A model generated the notes under the pieces. That model was given only the letters and a program-made list of their open reading frames with translations. It was not told the DNA's origin and searched no databases. Position numbers and translations under genes: made by a program. This document shows, one piece after another, positions 3,895 to 40,593 of a stretch of 64,000 nucleotides of DNA (its first letter is position 1; every line of letters begins with the position of its first letter). The stretch is taken from IMG/VR virus record IMGVR_UViG_3300024358_000009, positions 124,001-188,000 of that record; one strand, 5' to 3'.

Positions 3895-4646
3895 GGTTCA
3901 CCTCTTTTAAAAATTACACCAAACCAATTAAGTATTCTTTTATACCAAGGTATATAACCATTTATATATAAATATGTTGTGTCATTACAGTACTGAGGTT
4001 TGTCTTCAAATTCCGGTAAATACTCAGTTGTATTTTTACTTTCAAATAAAATATTATCTGAATATTTATTAACTTTTATTTTATTTTTTATATCATAACT
4101 TAATGACTTTGGCCAAGCAGATTCTAATACATCTCTATGATTATTGCTTAATACTGGTGGCCAAGAGTGTTTATTATTTGTTATTGCAAAAACAGCTGTT
4201 TTCCAAGCTTCTAAATAGTCATTATTCCATTTAAATACAGATGCTAAAAAACCATCATTAATTTGTTTTTCAAAAATTTTATAAGCAACTGGACTAACCC
4301 TTGTATCTGTAGCATGAACAATGATAAAGCAACTATCTCCGTGTTCTTGAAAAATAATAGGAAAAGCTTTTCTAAAATTTATACTCTCATAAAAACTGGT
4401 ATTTCCTACTTTGTCCAAAGTTTCTCTGTAAATAATATCATGAATCAATTTCCTTTTTTTTAAATCGTCTAAAATCCATTTTTTAGAAATTTCTGGATCA
4501 GCCCACAAAATATAAATAATGGGGCTGTGTTTAAAGAAAATTCTACATCTATAGATATGCTGAACATTATCTATTAGTTCGTGATATCTACGATGCAGAG
4601 TTATCAATATTATCGGTCTTTTGTAAGCCGATTGTGTGCATTGCAT
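3891..4646 (-). CDS. Hypothetical protein, possibly glycosyltransferase-like
   Basis: 251 aa AT-rich ORF between portal and protease; start uncertain because it overlaps the portal end. Confidence 0.5.
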   Translation of the reverse strand: MQCTQSAYKRPIILITLHRRYHELIDNVQHIYRCRIFFKHSPIIYILWADPEISKKWILDDLKKRKLIHDIIYRETLDKVGNTSFYESINFRKAFPIIFQEHGDSCFIIVHATDTRVSPVAYKIFEKQINDGFLASVFKWNNDYLEAWKTAVFAITNNKHSWPPVLSNNHRDVLESAWPKSLSYDIKNKIKVNKYSDNILFESKNTTEYLPEFEDKPQYCNDTTYLYINGYIPWYKRILNWFGVIFKRGEP

Positions 4647-13556: not shown

Positions 13557-14045
13557 ATGACCACTTCAATCGACTATGCAAAGATTACTGAAAAGCTTGT
13601 TTCCGCACTTGGCAAGAAAATACGCAACTATGCGGACTGCCAAGACATAGCTCAAAATATCCTAGTGTATGCTTTGCAAAGTTATAACCCTGCTATGGGA
13701 TCGGCTTTTGAAACGCACTGCTTTACTGTTATGCGTGGCAAGTCCATTGATTTCCTGAGAAGTAAATCCCGCAAGGGTAATCTGGTAAGCTGGGATATCC
13801 TTGAAGCTAATGACAATAATTCAGAAAAAACACTAGCACAAGGTATAGAAATTGCCGAAAAAACCTCCAAGTATAACCTATTGGAGATTGCAGAAGAATA
13901 CTGCAACGAACAAGAATATTTTATCATCCAACGCAAGCTTGAAGGCTTCGATGGATATGAAATAGCCAATATGCTAGGGGTTAGCCCAGGATATGTTAGT
14001 CAACAATTGTCAAGAGCAATAGAGAAAATGAAGGGGGGGTTCTAG
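13557..14045 (+). CDS. ECF-like sigma-70 factor
   Basis: 162 aa with only region 2 (DCQDIAQN...SIDFLR) and a region 4 HTH (GYEIANMLGVSPGYVSQQLSRA); AAAGGAA RBS. Confidence 0.85.
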   Translation: MTTSIDYAKITEKLVSALGKKIRNYADCQDIAQNILVYALQSYNPAMGSAFETHCFTVMRGKSIDFLRSKSRKGNLVSWDILEANDNNSEKTLAQGIEIAEKTSKYNLLEIAEEYCNEQEYFIIQRKLEGFDGYEIANMLGVSPGYVSQQLSRAIEKMKGGF

Positions 14046-14294: not shown

Positions 14295-14522
14295 TCTAAA
14301 GGGTTTTAACCTAACCTGCCAGTCTTACCCAACCTGGCCGGACCAGCCTCGGTACGCACATAGGTAATTGTATTACTTGTACTATGCCCGCAAAAATTGG
14401 ATATCTTTATCTTATTATCCAAATATCTTTTTAAAAATATTTTATTTTTATTGTAAATAAATCTGCAAGCGTAGCGAATAAGATTATATAAGAGAGAAGG
14501 GAATAAACAAAAGGAGAATAAA

Positions 14523-14940: not shown

Positions 14941-15015
14941 CGCCAAGGTTTCCCAGTATATCCATAAAACTGGGGGGCAAATAGTCAACTATATTTTTAC
15001 AGAAAGGAAACGACT

Positions 15016-15315
15016 ATGTTTACGATTACTGCCGGATGTTTTAATCAGCCATGTGACCTCCAAGAGCAAATTGGGAAGTCTATTGTTATAGCTGACTACG
15101 CAAGCCCTGATGAGGCTGGCAAACAAGTTGCCAAACGAATAGGTAAAATAGTAGCGTTTAGGCGGTTTTGGCCTAAATATGTAGAGAAGGATGGTAAATG
15201 CAGAATGACTAACCTGATAACGGTTGAATATCAAAGCGATAATCATTATGCAGAGAAAACCATCTCTTCCTATCATCTAGGTAAGATTAGATCTGGGGTT
15301 ATCTTGCCAGTATAA
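15016..15315 (+). CDS. Hypothetical early protein
   Basis: 99 aa; GAAAGGAA RBS. Confidence 0.65.
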   Translation: MFTITAGCFNQPCDLQEQIGKSIVIADYASPDEAGKQVAKRIGKIVAFRRFWPKYVEKDGKCRMTNLITVEYQSDNHYAEKTISSYHLGKIRSGVILPV

Positions 15316-15380
15316 ACAAAAAAGTTTTTCCTGTTTTTTCCTAAATAAAAGCAGGGGGCAAGCGAATAAGAGTATATAAC

Positions 15381-15603
15381 GCTAGGGCACTTGCTGATAC
15401 AAGAGGGCCACTTCCTTGGTGAAAATGGGCTTATCAGAGTCTAAGTAACCTTAAGAGGATGGGATAGTTCGAGACTATCTGGCGTAACCATATAATGATA
15501 GGTATGTTTGGTGTTTAGGTGCAATCCTCCGTGAGATACGGCAAAACGAAAAACACCGTTTTTAAACCTGTTAGTGGGGATGTCTTATCCCTGCTAACCC
15601 TAC
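15381..15603 (+). ncRNA. Candidate structured ncRNA (about 220 nt)
   Basis: Starts just after the promoter at 15363; no RBS-led ORF; multiple helices, with G-U pairs favouring the + strand. Confidence 0.55.
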
Positions 15604-15880
15604 CGAAATTGGATATCTTTATCTAATTATATTCTTTTAAAATTTTTTTATTTTGTTGTAAATAATTTTACCCTGCCAGCGAATAAGATTATATAAGCTT
15701 GGTGGTAATGCTTAAACCATCTATGCGAATGAGTATAGAATGAGGGGAGCCTGGACTATAATTGGATAATCTTATCTTATTATATTATTTAAAATAATTT
15801 TATTTTTTTTGTAAATAAATCATAAGCACTAGCGAATAAGTATATATAAGAGATAACGATAACAACAAAAGGAGATTAAA

Positions 15881-16069
15881 ATGAGCAACTACAATCCATT
15901 CGTTTGCAATTTTGAAAGAGAAGTTGAGATTGCAAAAGGGATGAGTAATCAAGGTTTAATTTCGGCAATCGCCGAATGTCTAGAATGTATTTCAATAGGC
16001 TGTAATACAGATAAATATGTGGATCAAGCCAAAGTGTATAGGCAAGAGTTGGCCAAAAGGGTAAGATAA
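15881..16069 (+). CDS. Hypothetical early protein
   Basis: Promoter and AAGGAG RBS; 62 aa. Confidence 0.7.
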   Translation: MSNYNPFVCNFEREVEIAKGMSNQGLISAIAECLECISIGCNTDKYVDQAKVYRQELAKRVR

Positions 16070-16131
16070 AATAATTTTTTTATAAATATTTTAATCTTAC
16101 AAGCGAATAAGTTAGTATAAAGGAGAATGAT

Positions 16132-16815
16132 ATGAAAATGGAATTGAATACTGTTGAGATTAATACTTCTAAGACTCAGAAGATGCCATGGGAAAGTTGG
16201 GATTTACCAGCTTGGATGTGCAAGACTGGTGCTAAGTTAGTAAAGGTAAAGGGTTCTATATGTGAAGGATGCTATGCATTAAAAGGACGATACATATTTG
16301 GAACGGTGAAGAATGCAAACTTAAAAAGATTTGATCAAATAAAAGATATAAATAACTTGGAAGATTGGAAAAATTCTTTCATAAGCTTATTCAAGTCTAA
16401 GCTAAAAAGACTTTCAGCAGAAAAAAGGTTTTTCAGATGGTTTACTAGTGGGGATTTGCAATCCGTAGATATGTTAGTAGCAATTGTAAATATTGCAAAA
16501 GCTATTCCAGAAATTCAATTCTGGTTGCCAACAAAAGAACATGGCATAATAAGGGAATACCAAGCCATACATGGTGAATTCCCTGCAAATCTTAATGTTC
16601 GTGTTTCAATGTTCATGGTCAATCAGGAACCAAGTAAGGGCTTAGGTTTACCTACCAGTACAGTAGTTAATTCCCCTGATGATATGAATGATAAACATCA
16701 GAACTTGTGCCCTGCTAGTCTTGAACAATTCAACGGCAAAGCCGAGGTTAATTGTGGAGATTGCAGGAAATGCTGGGATAAGAATGTAGATAATGTGGCA
16801 TACATATACCACTAA
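16132..16815 (+). CDS. Gp88-like phage protein (Cys-rich, radical-SAM-related)
   Basis: Motifs C.TG.KL..VKGSICEGCYA, FRWFTSGD, FWLPTKE, CPA and CGDCRKCW. Confidence 0.75.
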   Translation: MKMELNTVEINTSKTQKMPWESWDLPAWMCKTGAKLVKVKGSICEGCYALKGRYIFGTVKNANLKRFDQIKDINNLEDWKNSFISLFKSKLKRLSAEKRFFRWFTSGDLQSVDMLVAIVNIAKAIPEIQFWLPTKEHGIIREYQAIHGEFPANLNVRVSMFMVNQEPSKGLGLPTSTVVNSPDDMNDKHQNLCPASLEQFNGKAEVNCGDCRKCWDKNVDNVAYIYH

Positions 16816-19312: not shown

Positions 19313-19599
19313 TCAAGGTTAATGTAGAGTTTATCTTGCCAGCATATCTAAGAACTAAAGAAGAAGTGGCAAGCTATATCAACACACATCTTAAGAACAA
19401 CAACAATCTTAAGTATGTAATGCTTATCGAAGGCGATGTAGAAGATTTTAACATTCAAGCAGAAAGGTTTTAACTATGATTGATTTTCTTTGCTCAATGT
19501 ATTTTGCTTTGGAGTTTTACCAAATGGAAGTAATCTTTAACTTGTTCGGTGATAGGATTTTGCTTTAGACTTCTTAGAGGAATATTTCCTCTGCTAAAG

Positions 19600-19629
19600 A
19601 TTTTATCAACCCGCCCAAAATCCTGTCAA
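19600..19629 (-). promoter_or_regulatory. Sigma70-type promoter on the antisense strand
   Basis: TTGACA-N18-TAAAAT with an extended -10 TG. Confidence 0.65.
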
Positions 19630-20147
19630 GAAAAATCCGTAAGGATTTGCAAAATAGATGAACTTTTATGAAACTTGGTTTGCTACTTTCCCAAGGGGCA
19701 AAAAAAGTAGCACTTTTAATAATGTGCTGACAGTAAGCACTTTGTTTTCATTTATTGATATAAACTCTTTGGGTTCAATGACTTATGTTTATTTTTTAAA
19801 TTCTTCTTGTAAGGAATACTGGTATGTTTTCCTTACAAATATAGTGGGTAGGCTTGTCCTACCCCTTCTAAATTGACCGAAATTGGATATCTTTATCTAA
19901 TTGTAATTTTAAAAAATTTTTGTAAATAATTTTTATTAGCTGACGAATAAGTATATATAGAGAGGAGTAACTATTAAAATTTGAGTTATGAGTGGGAGTT
20001 CCTGCTTTCCAAAAGGAGAGGATGAGGGGAGCCTGGAAACTAATTAGATATGTTTATCTTATTATCTATTTAAGAATTTTTTTATTTTTATATAAATAAA
20101 TCTGTATGGCCAACGAATAAGATTATGTAAGAGGAAAGGAAAAGAAA

Positions 20148-21868: not shown

Positions 21869-21942
21869 GGGGATGTAGACCAACAGGCAGAGTCAAAGGA
21901 CTTAAAATCCTTCCAGTATGGGTTCGACTCCCATCATCCCTA
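21869..21942 (+). tRNA. tRNA-Leu (anticodon UAA), short variable loop, no encoded CCA
   Basis: Acceptor GGGGAUG/CAUCCCU; anticodon arm AAGGA-CUUAAAA-UCCUU; T arm AUGGG-UUCGACU-CCCAU; discriminator A. Confidence 0.92.
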
Positions 21943-28051: not shown

Positions 28052-28124
28052 GGGCGTGTAGACCAATGGCAGAGTCAAAGGACTTAAAATCCTTCAAGTA
28101 TGGGTTCGACTCCCATCACGCCTA
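28052..28124 (+). tRNA. Second tRNA-Leu (UAA), short variable loop, no encoded CCA
   Basis: Near copy of 21869-21942 with a compensatory acceptor stem GGGCGUG/CACGCCU. Confidence 0.92.
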
Positions 28125-37114: not shown

Positions 37115-38023
37115 ATGGAAGAAACTTTAAAAGTTTATGATATGTTTGCTGGTATTGGTGGTTTTTCTCTGGCTTTTCAACAAGCTGGTAATTACGAAAT
37201 AACAGCCAACGCAGAAATAGACAAATATCCTAGCGAAGTATTAAAAAAGAATTTTCCATCTATACCAAACTTTGGCGATGTTACAAAAATAACATATCAA
37301 TCAAATCAGTTTGATGTGATCGTGGGCGGATTTCCTTGCACAGACATTTCTATAGCAAGTAAAACAAAGGACGGTATTTATGGAAAAAGATCTATTCTCT
37401 GGAAAGAATTCTTTAGAGCAGTCACAGAAGTCAGACCAAAATATTGTGTCATTGAAAATGTCTTTATGCTCCTTAGAAGAGGGCTTAACACAATTCTCTC
37501 AGACCTTGCCAAAATCGGGTACGATGCGACTTATACGACCATTGATGCACAATTCTGCGGAACACCACAAAGAAGACGCAGAGTTTACATTCTCGGAGTC
37601 CGTGATGGAATCTCCGCCAACGCCGATATCTTCCAACTTGGAGAGCGTAGTACAACAGAATGTGAACGAAAAGTACAGTCTGTCAAAAAAAGCTTTAAGT
37701 GGTATTTTGAGCAGAGCGAAAAAAGGGAACAAGCCTTTGCCTACTTTACTCGCCAAAGAAGTGATCAATTTGATGAATGCGGAGTATCCTCCACATTAAC
37801 TAAAAGAGATTATAAATCTTTTACAGATTTAGTAGTGTCTAAAGGAAATATACGAAGAGTAACGCCAACAGAAAGACTTAGACTGATGGGTTTTCCCGAT
37901 GATTGGCATTTAACTAATGCCTCAGATACAGATAAGTATAAATATTGTGGAATGCATGTTCCTTCAGTTAAATATATTGCGGAATGCTTAAATAAATATC
38001 ATAAGGAAACTATTAAGGATTGA
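37115..38023 (+). CDS. C5-cytosine DNA methyltransferase family protein
   Basis: Motifs I (DMFAGIGG), IV (GGFPC), VI (ENV), VIII (PQRRRRVY) and IX (RRVTPTERLRLMGFPDDW); atypical motif X. Confidence 0.92.
   Translation: MEETLKVYDMFAGIGGFSLAFQQAGNYEITANAEIDKYPSEVLKKNFPSIPNFGDVTKITYQSNQFDVIVGGFPCTDISIASKTKDGIYGKRSILWKEFFRAVTEVRPKYCVIENVFMLLRRGLNTILSDLAKIGYDATYTTIDAQFCGTPQRRRRVYILGVRDGISANADIFQLGERSTTECERKVQSVKKSFKWYFEQSEKREQAFAYFTRQRSDQFDECGVSSTLTKRDYKSFTDLVVSKGNIRRVTPTERLRLMGFPDDWHLTNASDTDKYKYCGMHVPSVKYIAECLNKYHKETIKD
37380..37799 (+). CDS. Nested alternative-frame ORF inside the methyltransferase gene (possible second subunit)
   Basis: 139 codons open in AT-rich DNA; AAGGA 8 nt before the ATG; contains YSLSKKALSGILSRAKKGNKPLP. 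Confidence 0.55.
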   Translation: MEKDLFSGKNSLEQSQKSDQNIVSLKMSLCSLEEGLTQFSQTLPKSGTMRLIRPLMHNSAEHHKEDAEFTFSESVMESPPTPISSNLESVVQQNVNEKYSLSKKALSGILSRAKKGNKPLPTLLAKEVINLMNAEYPPH

Positions 38024-39121: not shown

Positions 39122-39316
39122 ATGGAAACAGGGAATTTAGTTTTTACAAGAAATTTTGGAGAGTCTTTTACTATTTTCACTCCATCTGGAAACATAGTAA
39201 TAACACTTCTTGCAGATAAGATAAGCATAAATAAAGCAAAAGTAAAAATAAATGCTCCAAAAGATTTTAAAATTATGAGAAATGAAATTATCAATACAAC
39301 GAGGGATAAAAAATGA
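39122..39316 (+). CDS. csrA: CsrA/RsmA family RNA-binding protein
   Basis: LVFTRNFGESFTI...VKINAPKDFKIMRNEI matches the CsrA pattern; TAGGAG RBS before the ATG at 39122. Confidence 0.8.
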   Translation: METGNLVFTRNFGESFTIFTPSGNIVITLLADKISINKAKVKINAPKDFKIMRNEIINTTRDKK

Positions 39317-40593
39317 ACAGGCGACACTTTTTACAGCATACAACAGAATTTGCTTCTCTTGCATTAGTATCTAATCTATATGCACAGCAAGAAACCATAA
39401 AGAAAAAGGGAAAAAGACTCATTGTGCTTTGGATGAGTGGTGGCCCAAGTCATATGGATTTATGGGATTTGAAGACAGGAGAATCAACTGGTGGAGACTT
39501 TAAACAGATCAAAACTTCTGCAAACGGAGTGCAGATTAGTGAGGTATTGCCAACAGTTGCTGAACAGTTCAAACACTTGGTGGCTATTAGATCTTTGGTT
39601 ACTAATGAAGGCAGTCATGAGCGTGGCACATTCTTAATGAATACGGCCAAGCAACCAAACCCAGTAGTGCAATATCCAGCTATGGGCGCAGTTGTATCTT
39701 CTATGATTGGCTCTAAAGAGTTGCCATTACCTAATTTTATTGGAATTGGTGGAACTGCACAACGCATTGGGCCAGGATTCCTTGGCGCAATGTACACTCC
39801 TTTTGTTGTGCAAAATCCTGGCGTTCCTCCAGAAAATATAAAGCCACCATCAGAAATTGGCAATGAAGAAGAGCGTCTTAGAAGAAGGCAGAGATTATTC
39901 TACGGAATAGAAGATGAGTTTGCTGCAAAGATAATGCCTCATGTAAAAGGTGCAAAAGACAGAGAAAGTTTAGGTAATGTCGCACAATCACATGCTTCTA
40001 TATATGGTAAAGCATTTGATCTAACTATTTCGCCACTTAGAACTGTATTTGAAATAAAGAACGAAAGCCAAGCGACTATAGATGCTTATGGCGGTAGGAT
40101 GAATCAGTTTGGCATGGGATGCCTTCTTGCAAGAAAATTAATTGAGAAGGGAGTTAGTTGTGTTCAAGTGGATCTCGGCGGATGGGATAATCATAATAAT
40201 ATCTTTTCTACTATTAGGAATGGTAATGGCCCTCGGCTTGATAAAGGTTTTGGAAACCTTGTAAAAGAACTAAACGATATTGGTCTTTGGAAAGATACTG
40301 TAGTTTTATGGATGGGCGAATTTGGTCGTACACCTAAGATTAATCAAAATGGTGGACGAGATCATTGGGCAAGATGTTGGTCTATAGTAGTAGGCGGAGG
40401 TTCCATTAAGGGTGGACAAGCTTATGGTTCTACTAGCAAAGATGGTTTAGACATTAAGGATAAGCCATGCTCAATAGGCGATGTATATGCTACTGTTTAT
40501 AAAGCTTTAGATATGGATCTATCTGCTCAAATTAGAGACAACATTGGACGACCCATGGCTATTACAGAAGGAAAACCTCTAGATATCTTTTAA
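39313..40593 (+). CDS. DUF1501 family protein with Tat signal
   Basis: Motifs MNRRHFL, LWMSGGPSHMDLWDLK, CLLARKLIEKGV, GGWDNH, WMGEFGRTPKIN and GRDHW. Confidence 0.92.
   Translation: MNRRHFLQHTTEFASLALVSNLYAQQETIKKKGKRLIVLWMSGGPSHMDLWDLKTGESTGGDFKQIKTSANGVQISEVLPTVAEQFKHLVAIRSLVTNEGSHERGTFLMNTAKQPNPVVQYPAMGAVVSSMIGSKELPLPNFIGIGGTAQRIGPGFLGAMYTPFVVQNPGVPPENIKPPSEIGNEEERLRRRQRLFYGIEDEFAAKIMPHVKGAKDRESLGNVAQSHASIYGKAFDLTISPLRTVFEIKNESQATIDAYGGRMNQFGMGCLLARKLIEKGVSCVQVDLGGWDNHNNIFSTIRNGNGPRLDKGFGNLVKELNDIGLWKDTVVLWMGEFGRTPKINQNGGRDHWARCWSIVVGGGSIKGGQAYGSTSKDGLDIKDKPCSIGDVYATVYKALDMDLSAQIRDNIGRPMAITEGKPLDIF

What the first reader, a model, noticed from the sequence alone, without database searches (positions are those of the whole stretch)
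15381..15603. Unassigned structured RNA of about 220 nt with its own promoter
Seen: transcript-sized gap after promoter 15363 with stems UAGGG/CCCUA, CUGAUA/UAUCAG, GAUAGU/ACUAUC, and GGUGUUU/AAACACC enclosing AGG-UGCAAU-CCU and CCGU-GAGAU-ACGG, then an 11-bp 3' hairpin. Several loops look T-loop-like. I cannot match it to tRNA, tmRNA, RNase P or a riboswitch. Inference: a new phage ncRNA class.
Basis: partly seen in the sequence, partly recalled or inferred. Interest (0 to 1): 0.65.

Follow-up and report, generated by a model that had tools for sequence, protein, structure and literature searches.

The report
Phage tRNA-shaped RNA fused to junction RNA
The gap in this freshwater jumbo phage holds a real non-coding transcription unit, but it is two separately evolving structured RNAs joined together: a 113-nt tRNA-shaped RNA with no anticodon that ends in CCA, and a three-way-junction RNA, neither matching any catalogued RNA family.

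Summary
The 223 nt are not one fold.

**Module 1 (15378-15490)** is a four-way junction:
- a 7-bp acceptor-like stem runs straight into a 5-bp T-like arm (loop UUCGAGA), followed by A-CCA;
- there is a 4-bp D-like hairpin and a long closed arm;
- the apical loop of that arm (UAUCAG) pairs with the D-like loop (CUGAUA), and one relative carries a compensatory change in this loop-loop pairing.

Six distinct variants exist. What follows the CCA differs between them: this junction RNA, a plain terminator, a deletion, or an ORF.

**Module 2 (15499-15568)** is a three-way junction followed by a U run. It occurs in 13 distinct variants. In relatives that lack module 1 it is preceded by a ribosome-binding site and a minimal ORF (AUG-UAU-UAA, AUG-AUC-UAG or AUG-UGA).

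The 3' hairpin belongs to a 3'-end cassette that recurs elsewhere.

Rfam and ARAGORN find nothing. The promoter is bipartite (TAAAT-N16-CGAATA) and probably depends on a phage sigma factor.

Function is inferred: module 1 is most likely a stand-alone mimic of the tRNA acceptor/T half.

The parts
15341..15368 (+). Bipartite phage promoter: TAAAT (15341-15345), 16-nt spacer, then CGAATA (15363-15368). The transcription start is inferred at about 15374-15376.
   Evidence: The motif GCGAATAAGNNTATATAA has 23 matches against 1.8 expected. TAAAT sits exactly 16 nt upstream of CGAATA at 18 of 39 genome sites. Ribosome-binding sites begin as close as 7-8 nt after CGAATA, so transcription must start within 5-7 nt of it. 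An ECF-type sigma gene lies at 13557-14045.
15378..15490 (+). Module 1: a tRNA-shaped RNA of 113 nt, comprising P1, P2, P3a/b, P4, the T-like arm and A-CCA.
   Evidence: Model R2 and alignment A8 hold 6 distinct sequences. Of 39 pairs, 94% of cells are paired and 19 pairs change on both sides. No shuffle of 500 reaches this, and slid controls give at most 2.
15378..15384 (+). P1 5' strand (acceptor-like, 7 positions). It pairs with 15480-15486. Position 1 is an A.A mismatch in five variants and C-G in L021.
   Evidence: helix 1: three pairs change on both sides.
15390..15403 (+). P2, the D-like hairpin: CUUG / CAAG with loop CUGAUA (15394-15399).
   Evidence: helix 2: 100% paired, and 3 of 4 pairs change on both sides.
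15411..15461 (+). P3a (15411-15417 with 15455-15461) and P3b (15418-15421 with 15447-15450): a long closed arm in the place of an anticodon arm. It encloses P4.
   Evidence: helices 4 and 5: six pairs change on both sides.
15426..15443 (+). P4 hairpin with apical loop UAUCAG (15432-15437). The loop forms six pairs with the P2 loop.
   Evidence: helix 3 (loop-loop): 100% paired in 6 sequences. One pair is U-A in five and A-U in L197 (CUGAAA / UUUCAG).
15463..15479 (+). T-like arm: GAUAG / CUAUC with loop UUCGAGA. It is contiguous with the P1 3' strand.
   Evidence: helix 7: all 5 pairs change on both sides. UUCGAG is invariant.
15480..15490 (+). P1 3' strand (15480-15486), an unpaired A (15487) and CCA (15488-15490).
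   Evidence: CCA is kept in all six variants (A-CCA in five, U-CCA in L021), while the sequence downstream is unrelated between them.
15499..15568 (+). Module 2:
- conserved lead-in GGUAUGUUU;
- three-way junction with stem 15510-15516 / 15551-15557;
- hairpin a at 15517-15528;
- hairpin b at 15529-15541;
- A-rich joiner;
- U run at 15559-15563.
   Evidence: Model R1. A5 (9 sequences) has 95% of cells paired and 13 compensatory pairs. A9 (14 matches) has 93% paired and 18 compensatory pairs, with 6 of 9 in the outer stem. No shuffle of 500 reaches this.
15570..15598 (+). 3' hairpin H3: 12 pairs including two G.U, with loop GUCUU.
   Evidence: It covaries (helices 4-5) and has z = -2.9. Copies of the H3 plus GGAUA-hairpin cassette lie at window 19844-19906 and after the 62-aa gene in L021.
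15611..15636 (+). Weak terminator-like hairpin GGAUA-UCUU-UAUCU followed by an A/U-rich tail. This is the recurring end of transcription units.
   Evidence: The same element precedes many promoters in the window and in relatives. The strict terminator scan does not call it.

Best explanation
**What it is (shown).** A promoter of the phage's own type (TAAAT-N16-CGAATA) drives a non-coding transcript made of two unrelated, separately conserved RNA modules and a generic 3'-end cassette.

Module 1 (15378-15490) is a tRNA-shaped four-way junction:
- a 7-bp acceptor-like stem is stacked directly on a 5-bp T-like arm with loop UUCGAGA, and is followed by A-CCA;
- a short D-like hairpin stands beside a long closed arm that takes the place of the anticodon arm;
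- the tip of that arm pairs with the D-like loop through six loop-loop pairs;
- there is no anticodon loop, so it cannot decode.

Module 2 (15499-15568) is a three-way junction closed by a stem that is followed by a U run.

**How it most likely works (inferred).**
- Module 1 is a self-contained small RNA. Conservation starts at the acceptor-like stem and stops at CCA. In relatives the module is followed by a plain terminator (L197), a deletion (L189), an ORF (L021) or module 2.
- I propose that it presents a rigid copy of the tRNA acceptor/T 'top half' with a CCA end. This would let it be handled by tRNA end-processing enzymes and then compete with, or act as a decoy for, a host factor that recognises tRNA acceptor ends or elbows.
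- In this window, module 2's stem plus U run serves at least as the 3' boundary of module 1. Module 2 is also a functional RNA in its own right, because it is conserved behind a different 5' element in many relatives.
For: **Modularity**
- nhmmer finds the two halves apart in relatives (sequences).
- The 5' module stands alone before an ORF in L021, before a plain 11-bp terminator hairpin in L197, and before a deletion in L189.
- The 3' module stands alone with its own promoter in L106, L029, L098, L112, L117, L110, L116, L109, L115, L190 and L198.

**Structure**
- Module 1: 39 pairs, 94% of cells paired, 19 pairs changed on both sides, slid controls at most 2. This includes the loop-loop helix with one compensatory swap.
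- Module 2.

**tRNA-like features read from the sequence**
- A 7 + 5 bp contiguous stack.
- The invariant loop UUCGAG.
- NCCA kept in all six variants while the flanks differ.

**5' end.** Ribosome-binding sites lie 7-8 nt after CGAATA in other genes. This places the transcription start 2-4 nt before P1.

**No known family.**

**Presence in RNA libraries.** Six metatranscriptome runs hold the stretch.
Against: - No transcript ends, strand or abundance could be measured.
- The decoy or competitor role is pure inference. No partner protein is identified, and the genome shows no CCA-adding enzyme, peptidyl-tRNA hydrolase or T4-type RNA ligase (the ligase control also rang nowhere).
- The phage's own tRNA genes do not encode CCA, so an encoded CCA here is not the local tRNA habit.
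- L021 has a 6-nt T-like loop and a C-G closing pair instead of G-C.
- The joiners (5 nt and 7 nt) are longer than in tRNA.
- The structure was derived from the same sequences on which it was counted, and these fall into only two deep lineages.
- Distribution is narrow. Nothing was found in about 1 Mb of relatives' loci or in five related genomes.
- In L021 the module sits 13 nt before a ribosome-binding site, which also fits a cis role.
Confidence: 0.45

Rival explanations
1. Module 1 acts in cis. It would be a 5'-terminal structured cap that hides the 5' end in P1, or a tRNA-like processing signal. Either would stabilise or release whatever lies downstream (the module 2 RNA here, an mRNA in L021). 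The ribosome-binding site plus minimal ORF would do the same job in relatives.
For: - P1 starts 2-4 nt after the inferred transcription start.
- In L021 the module directly precedes the ribosome-binding site of a small acidic ORF. The homologous ORF in L032 has a plain 25-nt leader.
- In the window, L167 and L193 the module occupies exactly the place that the ribosome-binding site and minimal ORF hold before module 2 elsewhere.
Against: - In L197 and L189 nothing but terminator-like hairpins follow the module, so there is no cargo to protect.
- A four-way junction with a loop-loop lock and a conserved CCA is far more elaborate than a 5' stabiliser needs to be.
Confidence: 0.2
2. Module 1 is a chargeable tRNA-like RNA. 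It would resemble a plant-virus tRNA-like structure or the tRNA-like domain of tmRNA, be aminoacylated, and act on the ribosome or on EF-Tu. Module 2 would be its ribosome-directed partner.
For: - It has an acceptor/T stack and an NCCA end.
- The long irregular arm leaving the junction recalls helix 2 of tmRNA (comparison from my own knowledge).
- The alternative 5' element before module 2 is a ribosome-binding site with a start-stop ORF, which is also ribosome-directed.
Against: - ARAGORN and Rfam find no tmRNA or tRNA.
- There is no G3.U70 and no tag reading frame.
- The unpaired base before CCA and the first pair differ between lineages (A with A.A, against U with C-G), which argues against one shared aminoacylation identity.
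Confidence: 0.08
3. The two complementary loops pair between molecules rather than within one.
For: - Six perfect loop-loop pairs are maintained by a compensatory change.
- Covariation cannot tell pairing within a molecule from pairing between molecules.
- The gene lies about 6 kb from the terminase and portal genes.
Against: - The phage has a large T4-type terminase and no phi29-type packaging genes were seen.
- The linkers around P4 allow the arm to fold back within one molecule.
- There is no direct evidence for this reading.
Confidence: 0.07
4. One reading: one ~220-nt RNA closed by UAGGG/CCCUA, with CUGAUA/UAUCAG as an internal helix.
For: Both complementarities exist in the window. The minimum-free-energy fold of the whole interval uses the outer stem.
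Against: - The outer stem overlaps the covarying P1.
- It is lost in L167 (UACGG, with no partner), L193, L189, L197 and L021.
- The halves occur separately in relatives.
- The hairpins carrying the two loops each covary.
- The whole-interval fold has z = -1.4.
Confidence: 0.05
5. Module 1 is a decaying tRNA gene or a chance structure with no function.
For: Distribution is narrow, thermodynamic stability is unremarkable, and low-stringency ARAGORN gives inconsistent models of a tRNA with an intron.
Against: - 19 pairs carry compensatory changes, including helices that tRNAs lack and a tertiary loop-loop pairing.
- The module keeps its boundaries in four different downstream contexts.
Confidence: 0.03

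Closest known systems
tRNA and tRNA-like structures (plant-virus 3' tRNA-like structures, mascRNA)
   Same: A four-way junction, a 7-bp terminal stem stacked on a 5-bp arm with a UUCGA-type loop, and a 3' NCCA. These are the elements that RNase P and CCA-end enzymes read (my own knowledge of tRNA recognition).
   Different: - No anticodon loop.
- The D-like loop lacks GG and instead pairs with the tip of the closed long arm.
- The joiners are 5 and 7 nt, not 2 and 1.
- The variable region is 1 nt.
- The Rfam tRNA model and ARAGORN at default settings do not match.
tRNA-like domain of tmRNA
   Same: An acceptor stem plus T arm, with a long irregular helix in place of the anticodon stem.
   Different: There is no mRNA-like tag frame, no pseudoknot series and no G3.U70. 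The size is 113 nt, not about 360. Neither tmRNA models nor ARAGORN match.
Phage T4 stable RNAs RNAC and RNAD
   Same: They are small, stable, phage-encoded non-coding RNAs, still described as 'of yet unknown functions' (PMC9697503). They are encoded in the T4 tRNA region (my own knowledge).
   Different: This is an analogy only.
phi29 prohead RNA (pRNA)
   Same: A phage RNA of about 120 nt with a multi-helix junction and two loops complementary to each other (PMC5066667).
   Different: - The pRNA loops pair between molecules through 4 nt, on a packaging motor that this phage does not appear to have.
- pRNA has no T-like arm and no CCA.
- No Rfam match.
For module 2 in relatives: lambda bar minigenes and bacterial start-stop / minimal ORFs
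   Same: A ribosome-binding site followed by a two-codon ORF or AUG-stop at the 5' end of a short transcript. Two-codon minigenes are known to sequester peptidyl-tRNA (PMC2490762, and my own knowledge of lambda bar).
   Different: Here the minimal ORF sits about 21-25 nt before a conserved three-way junction. The window itself has no minimal ORF, because module 1 replaces it.
Intrinsic (Rho-independent) terminator
   Same: Module 2's outer stem is followed directly by a U run (GUUUUU in the window). L197 has an ordinary hairpin plus U run at the same place.
   Different: - The 'loop' is a conserved 34-nt two-hairpin junction.
- The U run shrinks to UUU in several relatives, where more conserved RNA follows.
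- The consensus terminator scan does not call it.

Membership tests
tRNA (Rfam RF00005 / ARAGORN) | Match to the tRNA covariance model or to the ARAGORN cloverleaf at default settings | tested here: not met
   Searches give no match, even at E up to 10. In one search, default ARAGORN finds nothing, and only the lowered thresholds give mutually inconsistent models.
tRNA (Rfam RF00005 / ARAGORN) | 7-bp acceptor stem contiguous with a 5-bp T stem, a UUCRA-type T loop and a 3' NCCA | tested here: met
   Read from the sequence and counted. L021 departs from this with a 6-nt loop.
tRNA (Rfam RF00005 / ARAGORN) | 7-nt anticodon loop on a 5-bp stem, and a D loop with GG | tested here: not met
   P3a continues into P3b and P4. 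The D-like loop is CUGAUA and pairs with the P4 loop.
tmRNA | tRNA-like domain plus a tag reading frame and pseudoknots; detection by ARAGORN or the Rfam tmRNA models | tested here: not met
   There is no tag frame, and the third pair is C3-G70 rather than G.U.
Any Rfam 15 family (riboswitches, ribozymes, RNase P, Y RNA, 6S and others) | Covariance-model match | tested here: not met
   One search used gathering scores. One search (E up to 10) gave only a chance Hrs1 hit on the minus strand. One search covered the relatives L105, L106, L112 and L115.
Riboswitch (generic) | A conserved aptamer upstream of a consistent gene class, with an expression platform | tested here: not met
   What follows module 1 is an ORF, a junction RNA, a plain terminator or a deletion. 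What follows module 2 is non-coding.
Intrinsic terminator (module 2 outer stem) | A G+C-rich hairpin with a short loop, followed immediately by a U tract | tested here: inconclusive
   The stem plus GUUUUU is present, and a plain terminator sits at the same site in L197. However, the loop is 34 nt, the scan finds no terminator, and the U run is only UUU in L112 and L116.
phi29-type pRNA | Intermolecular loop-loop pairing that forms a ring on the portal | not testable with these tools
   Loop complementarity is shown. Whether it forms within or between molecules cannot be told from sequence.
Protein-coding gene | A conserved open reading frame | tested here: not met
   No ORF of 30 aa or more overlaps module 1. 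Short frames through module 2 differ in frame and length between relatives. Substitutions are compensatory in stems.

The most novel reading that the evidence does not exclude
Module 1 would be an anticodon-less mimic of the tRNA 'top half'. The phage would make it early as an anti-defence decoy for host toxins or nucleases that attack tRNA acceptor or CCA ends or elbows.

Its exchange with a ribosome-binding site and start-stop ORF in front of the same three-way-junction RNA would mean that module 2 is delivered to the translation machinery by either of two alternative 'handles'.
Probability: 0.12. Interest if true: 0.85.

Novelty: new variant of a known kind. Interest (0 to 1): 0.6.

Why it matters
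tRNA mimicry is a recurring viral strategy, but very few phage-encoded tRNA-like RNAs that are not tRNAs have been described. T4's RNAC and RNAD are still without a function.

Module 1 is a compact, well-delimited and covariation-supported fold. It keeps only the acceptor/T half and the CCA end, and it locks the rest with a loop-loop pairing. That makes it a ready substrate for structural work and for asking which host tRNA-binding factor a phage might want to occupy.

The locus also shows structured RNA modules being shuffled between transcription units through repeated promoter and terminator cassettes. It further exposes a second family: a three-way junction preceded by a minimal ORF.

Tried and rejected
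- **Known RNA families.** Rfam at gathering and permissive thresholds, on the window and on relatives, gave nothing relevant. ARAGORN with introns, with lowered thresholds and in mitochondrial mode gave only inconsistent low-score models.
- **GenBank phages.** blastn of 15300-15900 found no match.
- **Exact-pattern scans.** Scans of viral contigs returned only near-identical copies plus chance hits in coding regions (L093, L095). In the metagenome pattern scan, 61 of 66 hits were chance.
- **Model R2 (module 1).** It found nothing in about 1 Mb of relatives' loci or in five related genomes of 117-161 kb.
- **Reads.** The later family scans of the window's own genome read the whole record, which contains those places. 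L009, which starts at window 14633, served as a stand-in for the window in model searches.
- **Rejected ideas.**
  - Hammerhead ribozyme: CUGAUA lacks the essential G of CUGAUGA, and there is no Rfam hit.
  - Retron or CRISPR-type guide RNA: no RT or Cas neighbours.
  - YrlA-type Y RNA: there the ends form the other arm, and there is no Rfam hit.
  - TATATAA as a -10 box: ribosome-binding sites follow it too closely.
- **Published catalogue.** The catalogue of IMG/VR structured RNAs (PMC10690425) could not be checked for this motif, because no supplement is held.

Full report
**Setting**

The window is bases 124001-188000 of a 206-kb IMG/VR phage record judged complete. The record has about 33% G+C, a large terminase, a portal and a ribonucleotide reductase. 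Near-identical contigs come from riverine and lake metagenomes.

The finding lies in a run of short plus-strand transcription units. Each unit is headed by the motif GCGAATAAGNNTATATAA, which has 23 matches in the window against 1.8 expected.

**Promoter and 5' end**

- Across the genome, TAAAT lies exactly 16 nt upstream of CGAATA at 18 of 39 sites. The background chance of TAAAT in any 30-nt stretch is 0.12.
- In many genes a ribosome-binding site begins only 7-8 nt after CGAATA. TATATAA therefore cannot be a -10 box, and transcription must start about 5-7 nt after CGAATA, near 15374-15376.
- The phage encodes a 162-aa sigma factor with regions 2 and 4 at 13557-14045.
- A bipartite element of the form xTAAAT-N16-CGAATA resembles ECF-type promoters such as B. 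subtilis sigma-W (TGAAAC-N16-CGTATA). That comparison rests on my own knowledge and is an inference.

**Observation check**

- No ORF of 30 aa or more covers 15316-15518 on either strand.
- Rfam finds only the two tRNA-Leu genes in the window, and nothing in 15250-15900 even at E up to 10. ARAGORN finds no tRNA or tmRNA there.
- Folding energy is not exceptional: z = -1.4 for the whole interval, -1.4 for module 1, -0.5 for module 2 and -2.9 for the 3' hairpin.

**Two modules, not one RNA**

Relatives were fetched in three ways:
- through the terminase;
- through the 227-aa GP88-like neighbour;
- through the 99-aa upstream protein.

nhmmer showed that the two halves of the interval occur separately.

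The 5' half stands in several contexts:
- alone, between the same promoter and a small acidic ORF, in L021;
- absent from the L032 clade, where that ORF has a plain leader;
- fused to the 3' half, as in the window, in L167 and L193;
- followed by a deletion in L189, and by an ordinary 11-bp hairpin plus U run in L197.

The 3' half stands alone behind its own promoter in L106, L029, L098, L112, L117, L110, L116, L109, L115, L190 and L198.

**Module 1 (15378-15490)**

Hand comparison followed by a covariance model (R2) and a model-guided alignment of six distinct sequences (A8) gives this structure:

| Element | Window coordinates | Notes |
|---|---|---|
| P1 | 15378-84 with 15480-86 | acceptor-like stem |
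| Joiner | 15385-89 | NNGCA |
| P2 | 15390-93 with 15400-03 | loop CUGAUA |
| Joiner | 15404-10 | AGGGCNA |
| P3a | 15411-17 with 15455-61 | |
| P3b | 15418-21 with 15447-50 | |
| P4 | 15426-31 with 15438-43 | loop UAUCAG |
| T-like arm | 15463-67 with 15475-79 | loop UUCGAGA, contiguous with P1 |
| 3' end | 15487-90 | A, then CCA |

Counting 39 pairs, including the six loop-loop pairs, gives these results:
- 94% of cells are paired.
- 19 pairs change on both sides.
- No shuffle of 500 reaches this.
- Slid controls show 31-49% pairing and at most 2 such pairs.
- All five T-arm pairs and three of four P2 pairs are compensatory.
- In the loop-loop helix, L197 carries CUGAAA / UUUCAG where the others carry CUGAUA / UAUCAG. 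That is a U-A to A-U swap.

Caveats:
- The structure was derived from these same sequences.
- They fall into two deep lineages plus close variants.
- The alignment was fitted to the model.

**How tRNA-like is module 1?**

Features met:
- a 7 + 5 bp contiguous stack;
- a UUCGA-type loop closed by G-C (in five of six variants);
- NCCA;
- a four-way junction.

Features not met:
- an anticodon loop;
- a GG-containing D loop;
- standard joiner lengths;
- any model match.

It is therefore a tRNA-shaped mimic and not a tRNA. Conservation begins at P1 and ends at CCA, while the downstream context varies fourfold. In L197 the unit is simply promoter, module, terminator. This points to a self-contained small RNA rather than a leader serving one particular gene.

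The phage's own three tRNA genes lack an encoded CCA. The genome shows no CCA-adding enzyme or peptidyl-tRNA hydrolase.

**Module 2 (15499-15568)**

Model R1 aligns nine sequences (A5) and then fourteen matches (A9):
- The outer stem (GGUGUUU / AAACACC in the window) shows up to four pair types per position, and 6 of its 9 pairs are compensatory.
- Hairpin b (NGGU-GAGAU-ACCN) covaries C-G, A-U and U.G.
- The GG/CC pairs of hairpin a never vary.
- Overall, 93-95% of cells are paired, with 13 and 18 compensatory pairs and no shuffle of 500 reaching this.

A U run follows the stem. L197 has a plain terminator in the same place, so in the window the stem probably helps to end the module 1 transcript. 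The consensus terminator scan does not call it, and the U run is short in several relatives.

In every relative without module 1, the RNA begins with a ribosome-binding site and a minimal ORF about 21-25 nt before the junction:
- AUG-UAU-UAA in eight relatives;
- AUG-AUC-UAG in L115;
- AUG-UGA in L190 and L198.

In the window, L167 and L193, module 1 takes that position.

**3' hairpin**

H3 (15570-15598) covaries. Together with the GGAUA-UCUU-UAUCU hairpin it recurs at window 19844-19906 and after another gene in L021. It is therefore a generic 3'-end cassette.

**Expression**

Eighteen DNA runs and six metatranscriptome runs from river samples hold 15000-16200 as contigs. This is weak support for transcription.

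Afterwards I worked beside those places and sent none of their letters to any search tool as a query or as a searched stretch. The own-genome family scans did read the whole record that holds them.

**Interpretation**

Shown:
- a promoter-driven non-coding locus;
- two new, covariation-supported RNA folds;
- their modular exchange between transcription units;
- the tRNA-like acceptor/T/CCA features;
- a conserved loop-loop pairing.

Inferred:
- the position of the transcription start;
- handling of module 1 by tRNA-end enzymes;
- a decoy or competitor role for module 1;
- a terminator role for module 2's stem.

The rivals are listed separately: a cis-acting 5' cap, a chargeable tRNA-like RNA, and an oligomerising scaffold.

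**Literature**

Full-text searches found no description of such an RNA. T4 RNAC and RNAD remain of unknown function (PMC9697503). A catalogue of about 10,000 candidate viral structured RNAs exists (PMC10690425), but I could not check it for this motif.

**Verdict**

This is a real feature and a new RNA family. More precisely, it is two families, and module 1 is a new variant of the tRNA-mimic theme. Distribution is narrow, and function is untested.

Noticed in passing
window 15698-15775: A second small non-coding RNA with its own promoter (15679) and terminator cassette. It is conserved in L105 3312-3390, L106 3307-3374, L115 3131-3199, L189, L197 and L198. The hairpin CUAU/AUAG covaries to CCAU/AUGG. 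In L190 it is fused directly behind the three-way junction.
   Followed up: partly
L106 4603-4632; L115 ~4420-4450; L190 ~2625-2650; L198 ~1930-1950: In relatives the junction RNA starts with a strong ribosome-binding site and a minimal ORF: AUG-UAU-UAA, AUG-AUC-UAG or AUG-UGA. This recalls the lambda bar minigenes and bacterial start-stop elements. The window has no such ORF.
   Followed up: partly
window 13557-14045 and about 39 sites genome-wide: A phage-encoded sigma factor of 162 aa with regions 2 and 4, and a bipartite promoter TAAAT-N16-CGAATA that resembles ECF-type promoters. Relatives carry the same sigma gene upstream (L188, L190, L198).
   Followed up: partly
window 19560-19740 (compare L110 6060-6240): Another conserved non-coding stretch. 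It contains a simplified look-alike of module 2's stem (UGCUACUUU / AAAGUAGCA around GGGGCAAA, then a U run) and gives a weak R1 hit at 19665-19737.
   Followed up: no
L167 812-850 and L193 ~866-904: In these variants hairpin a of module 2 is expanded to GGUGA-UAAG-UCACC-AAUA-GGUGA. UCACC can pair with either GGUGA copy, so the insertion looks like a possible switch.
   Followed up: no
window 21869-21942 and 28052-28124; genome 4200-4273: There are two tRNA-Leu(UAA) genes and one tRNA-Met gene, none with an encoded CCA. The tRNA-Met has an unusual T loop, UGCAAGU, which resembles the UGCAAU loop of hairpin a.
   Followed up: partly
L115 1946-2003: A sub-threshold Rfam match to DUF2815 RNA (30.5 bits against a gathering score of 41.2; E = 0.037).
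   Followed up: no
Nothing was laid, and the places were avoided afterwards. A promoter-motif copy lies just downstream at 14474.
   Followed up: no
window 39313-40593; 37115-38023: A DUF1501 protein (E = 2e-92) and a C-5 cytosine DNA methylase are encoded in this phage.
   Followed up: no
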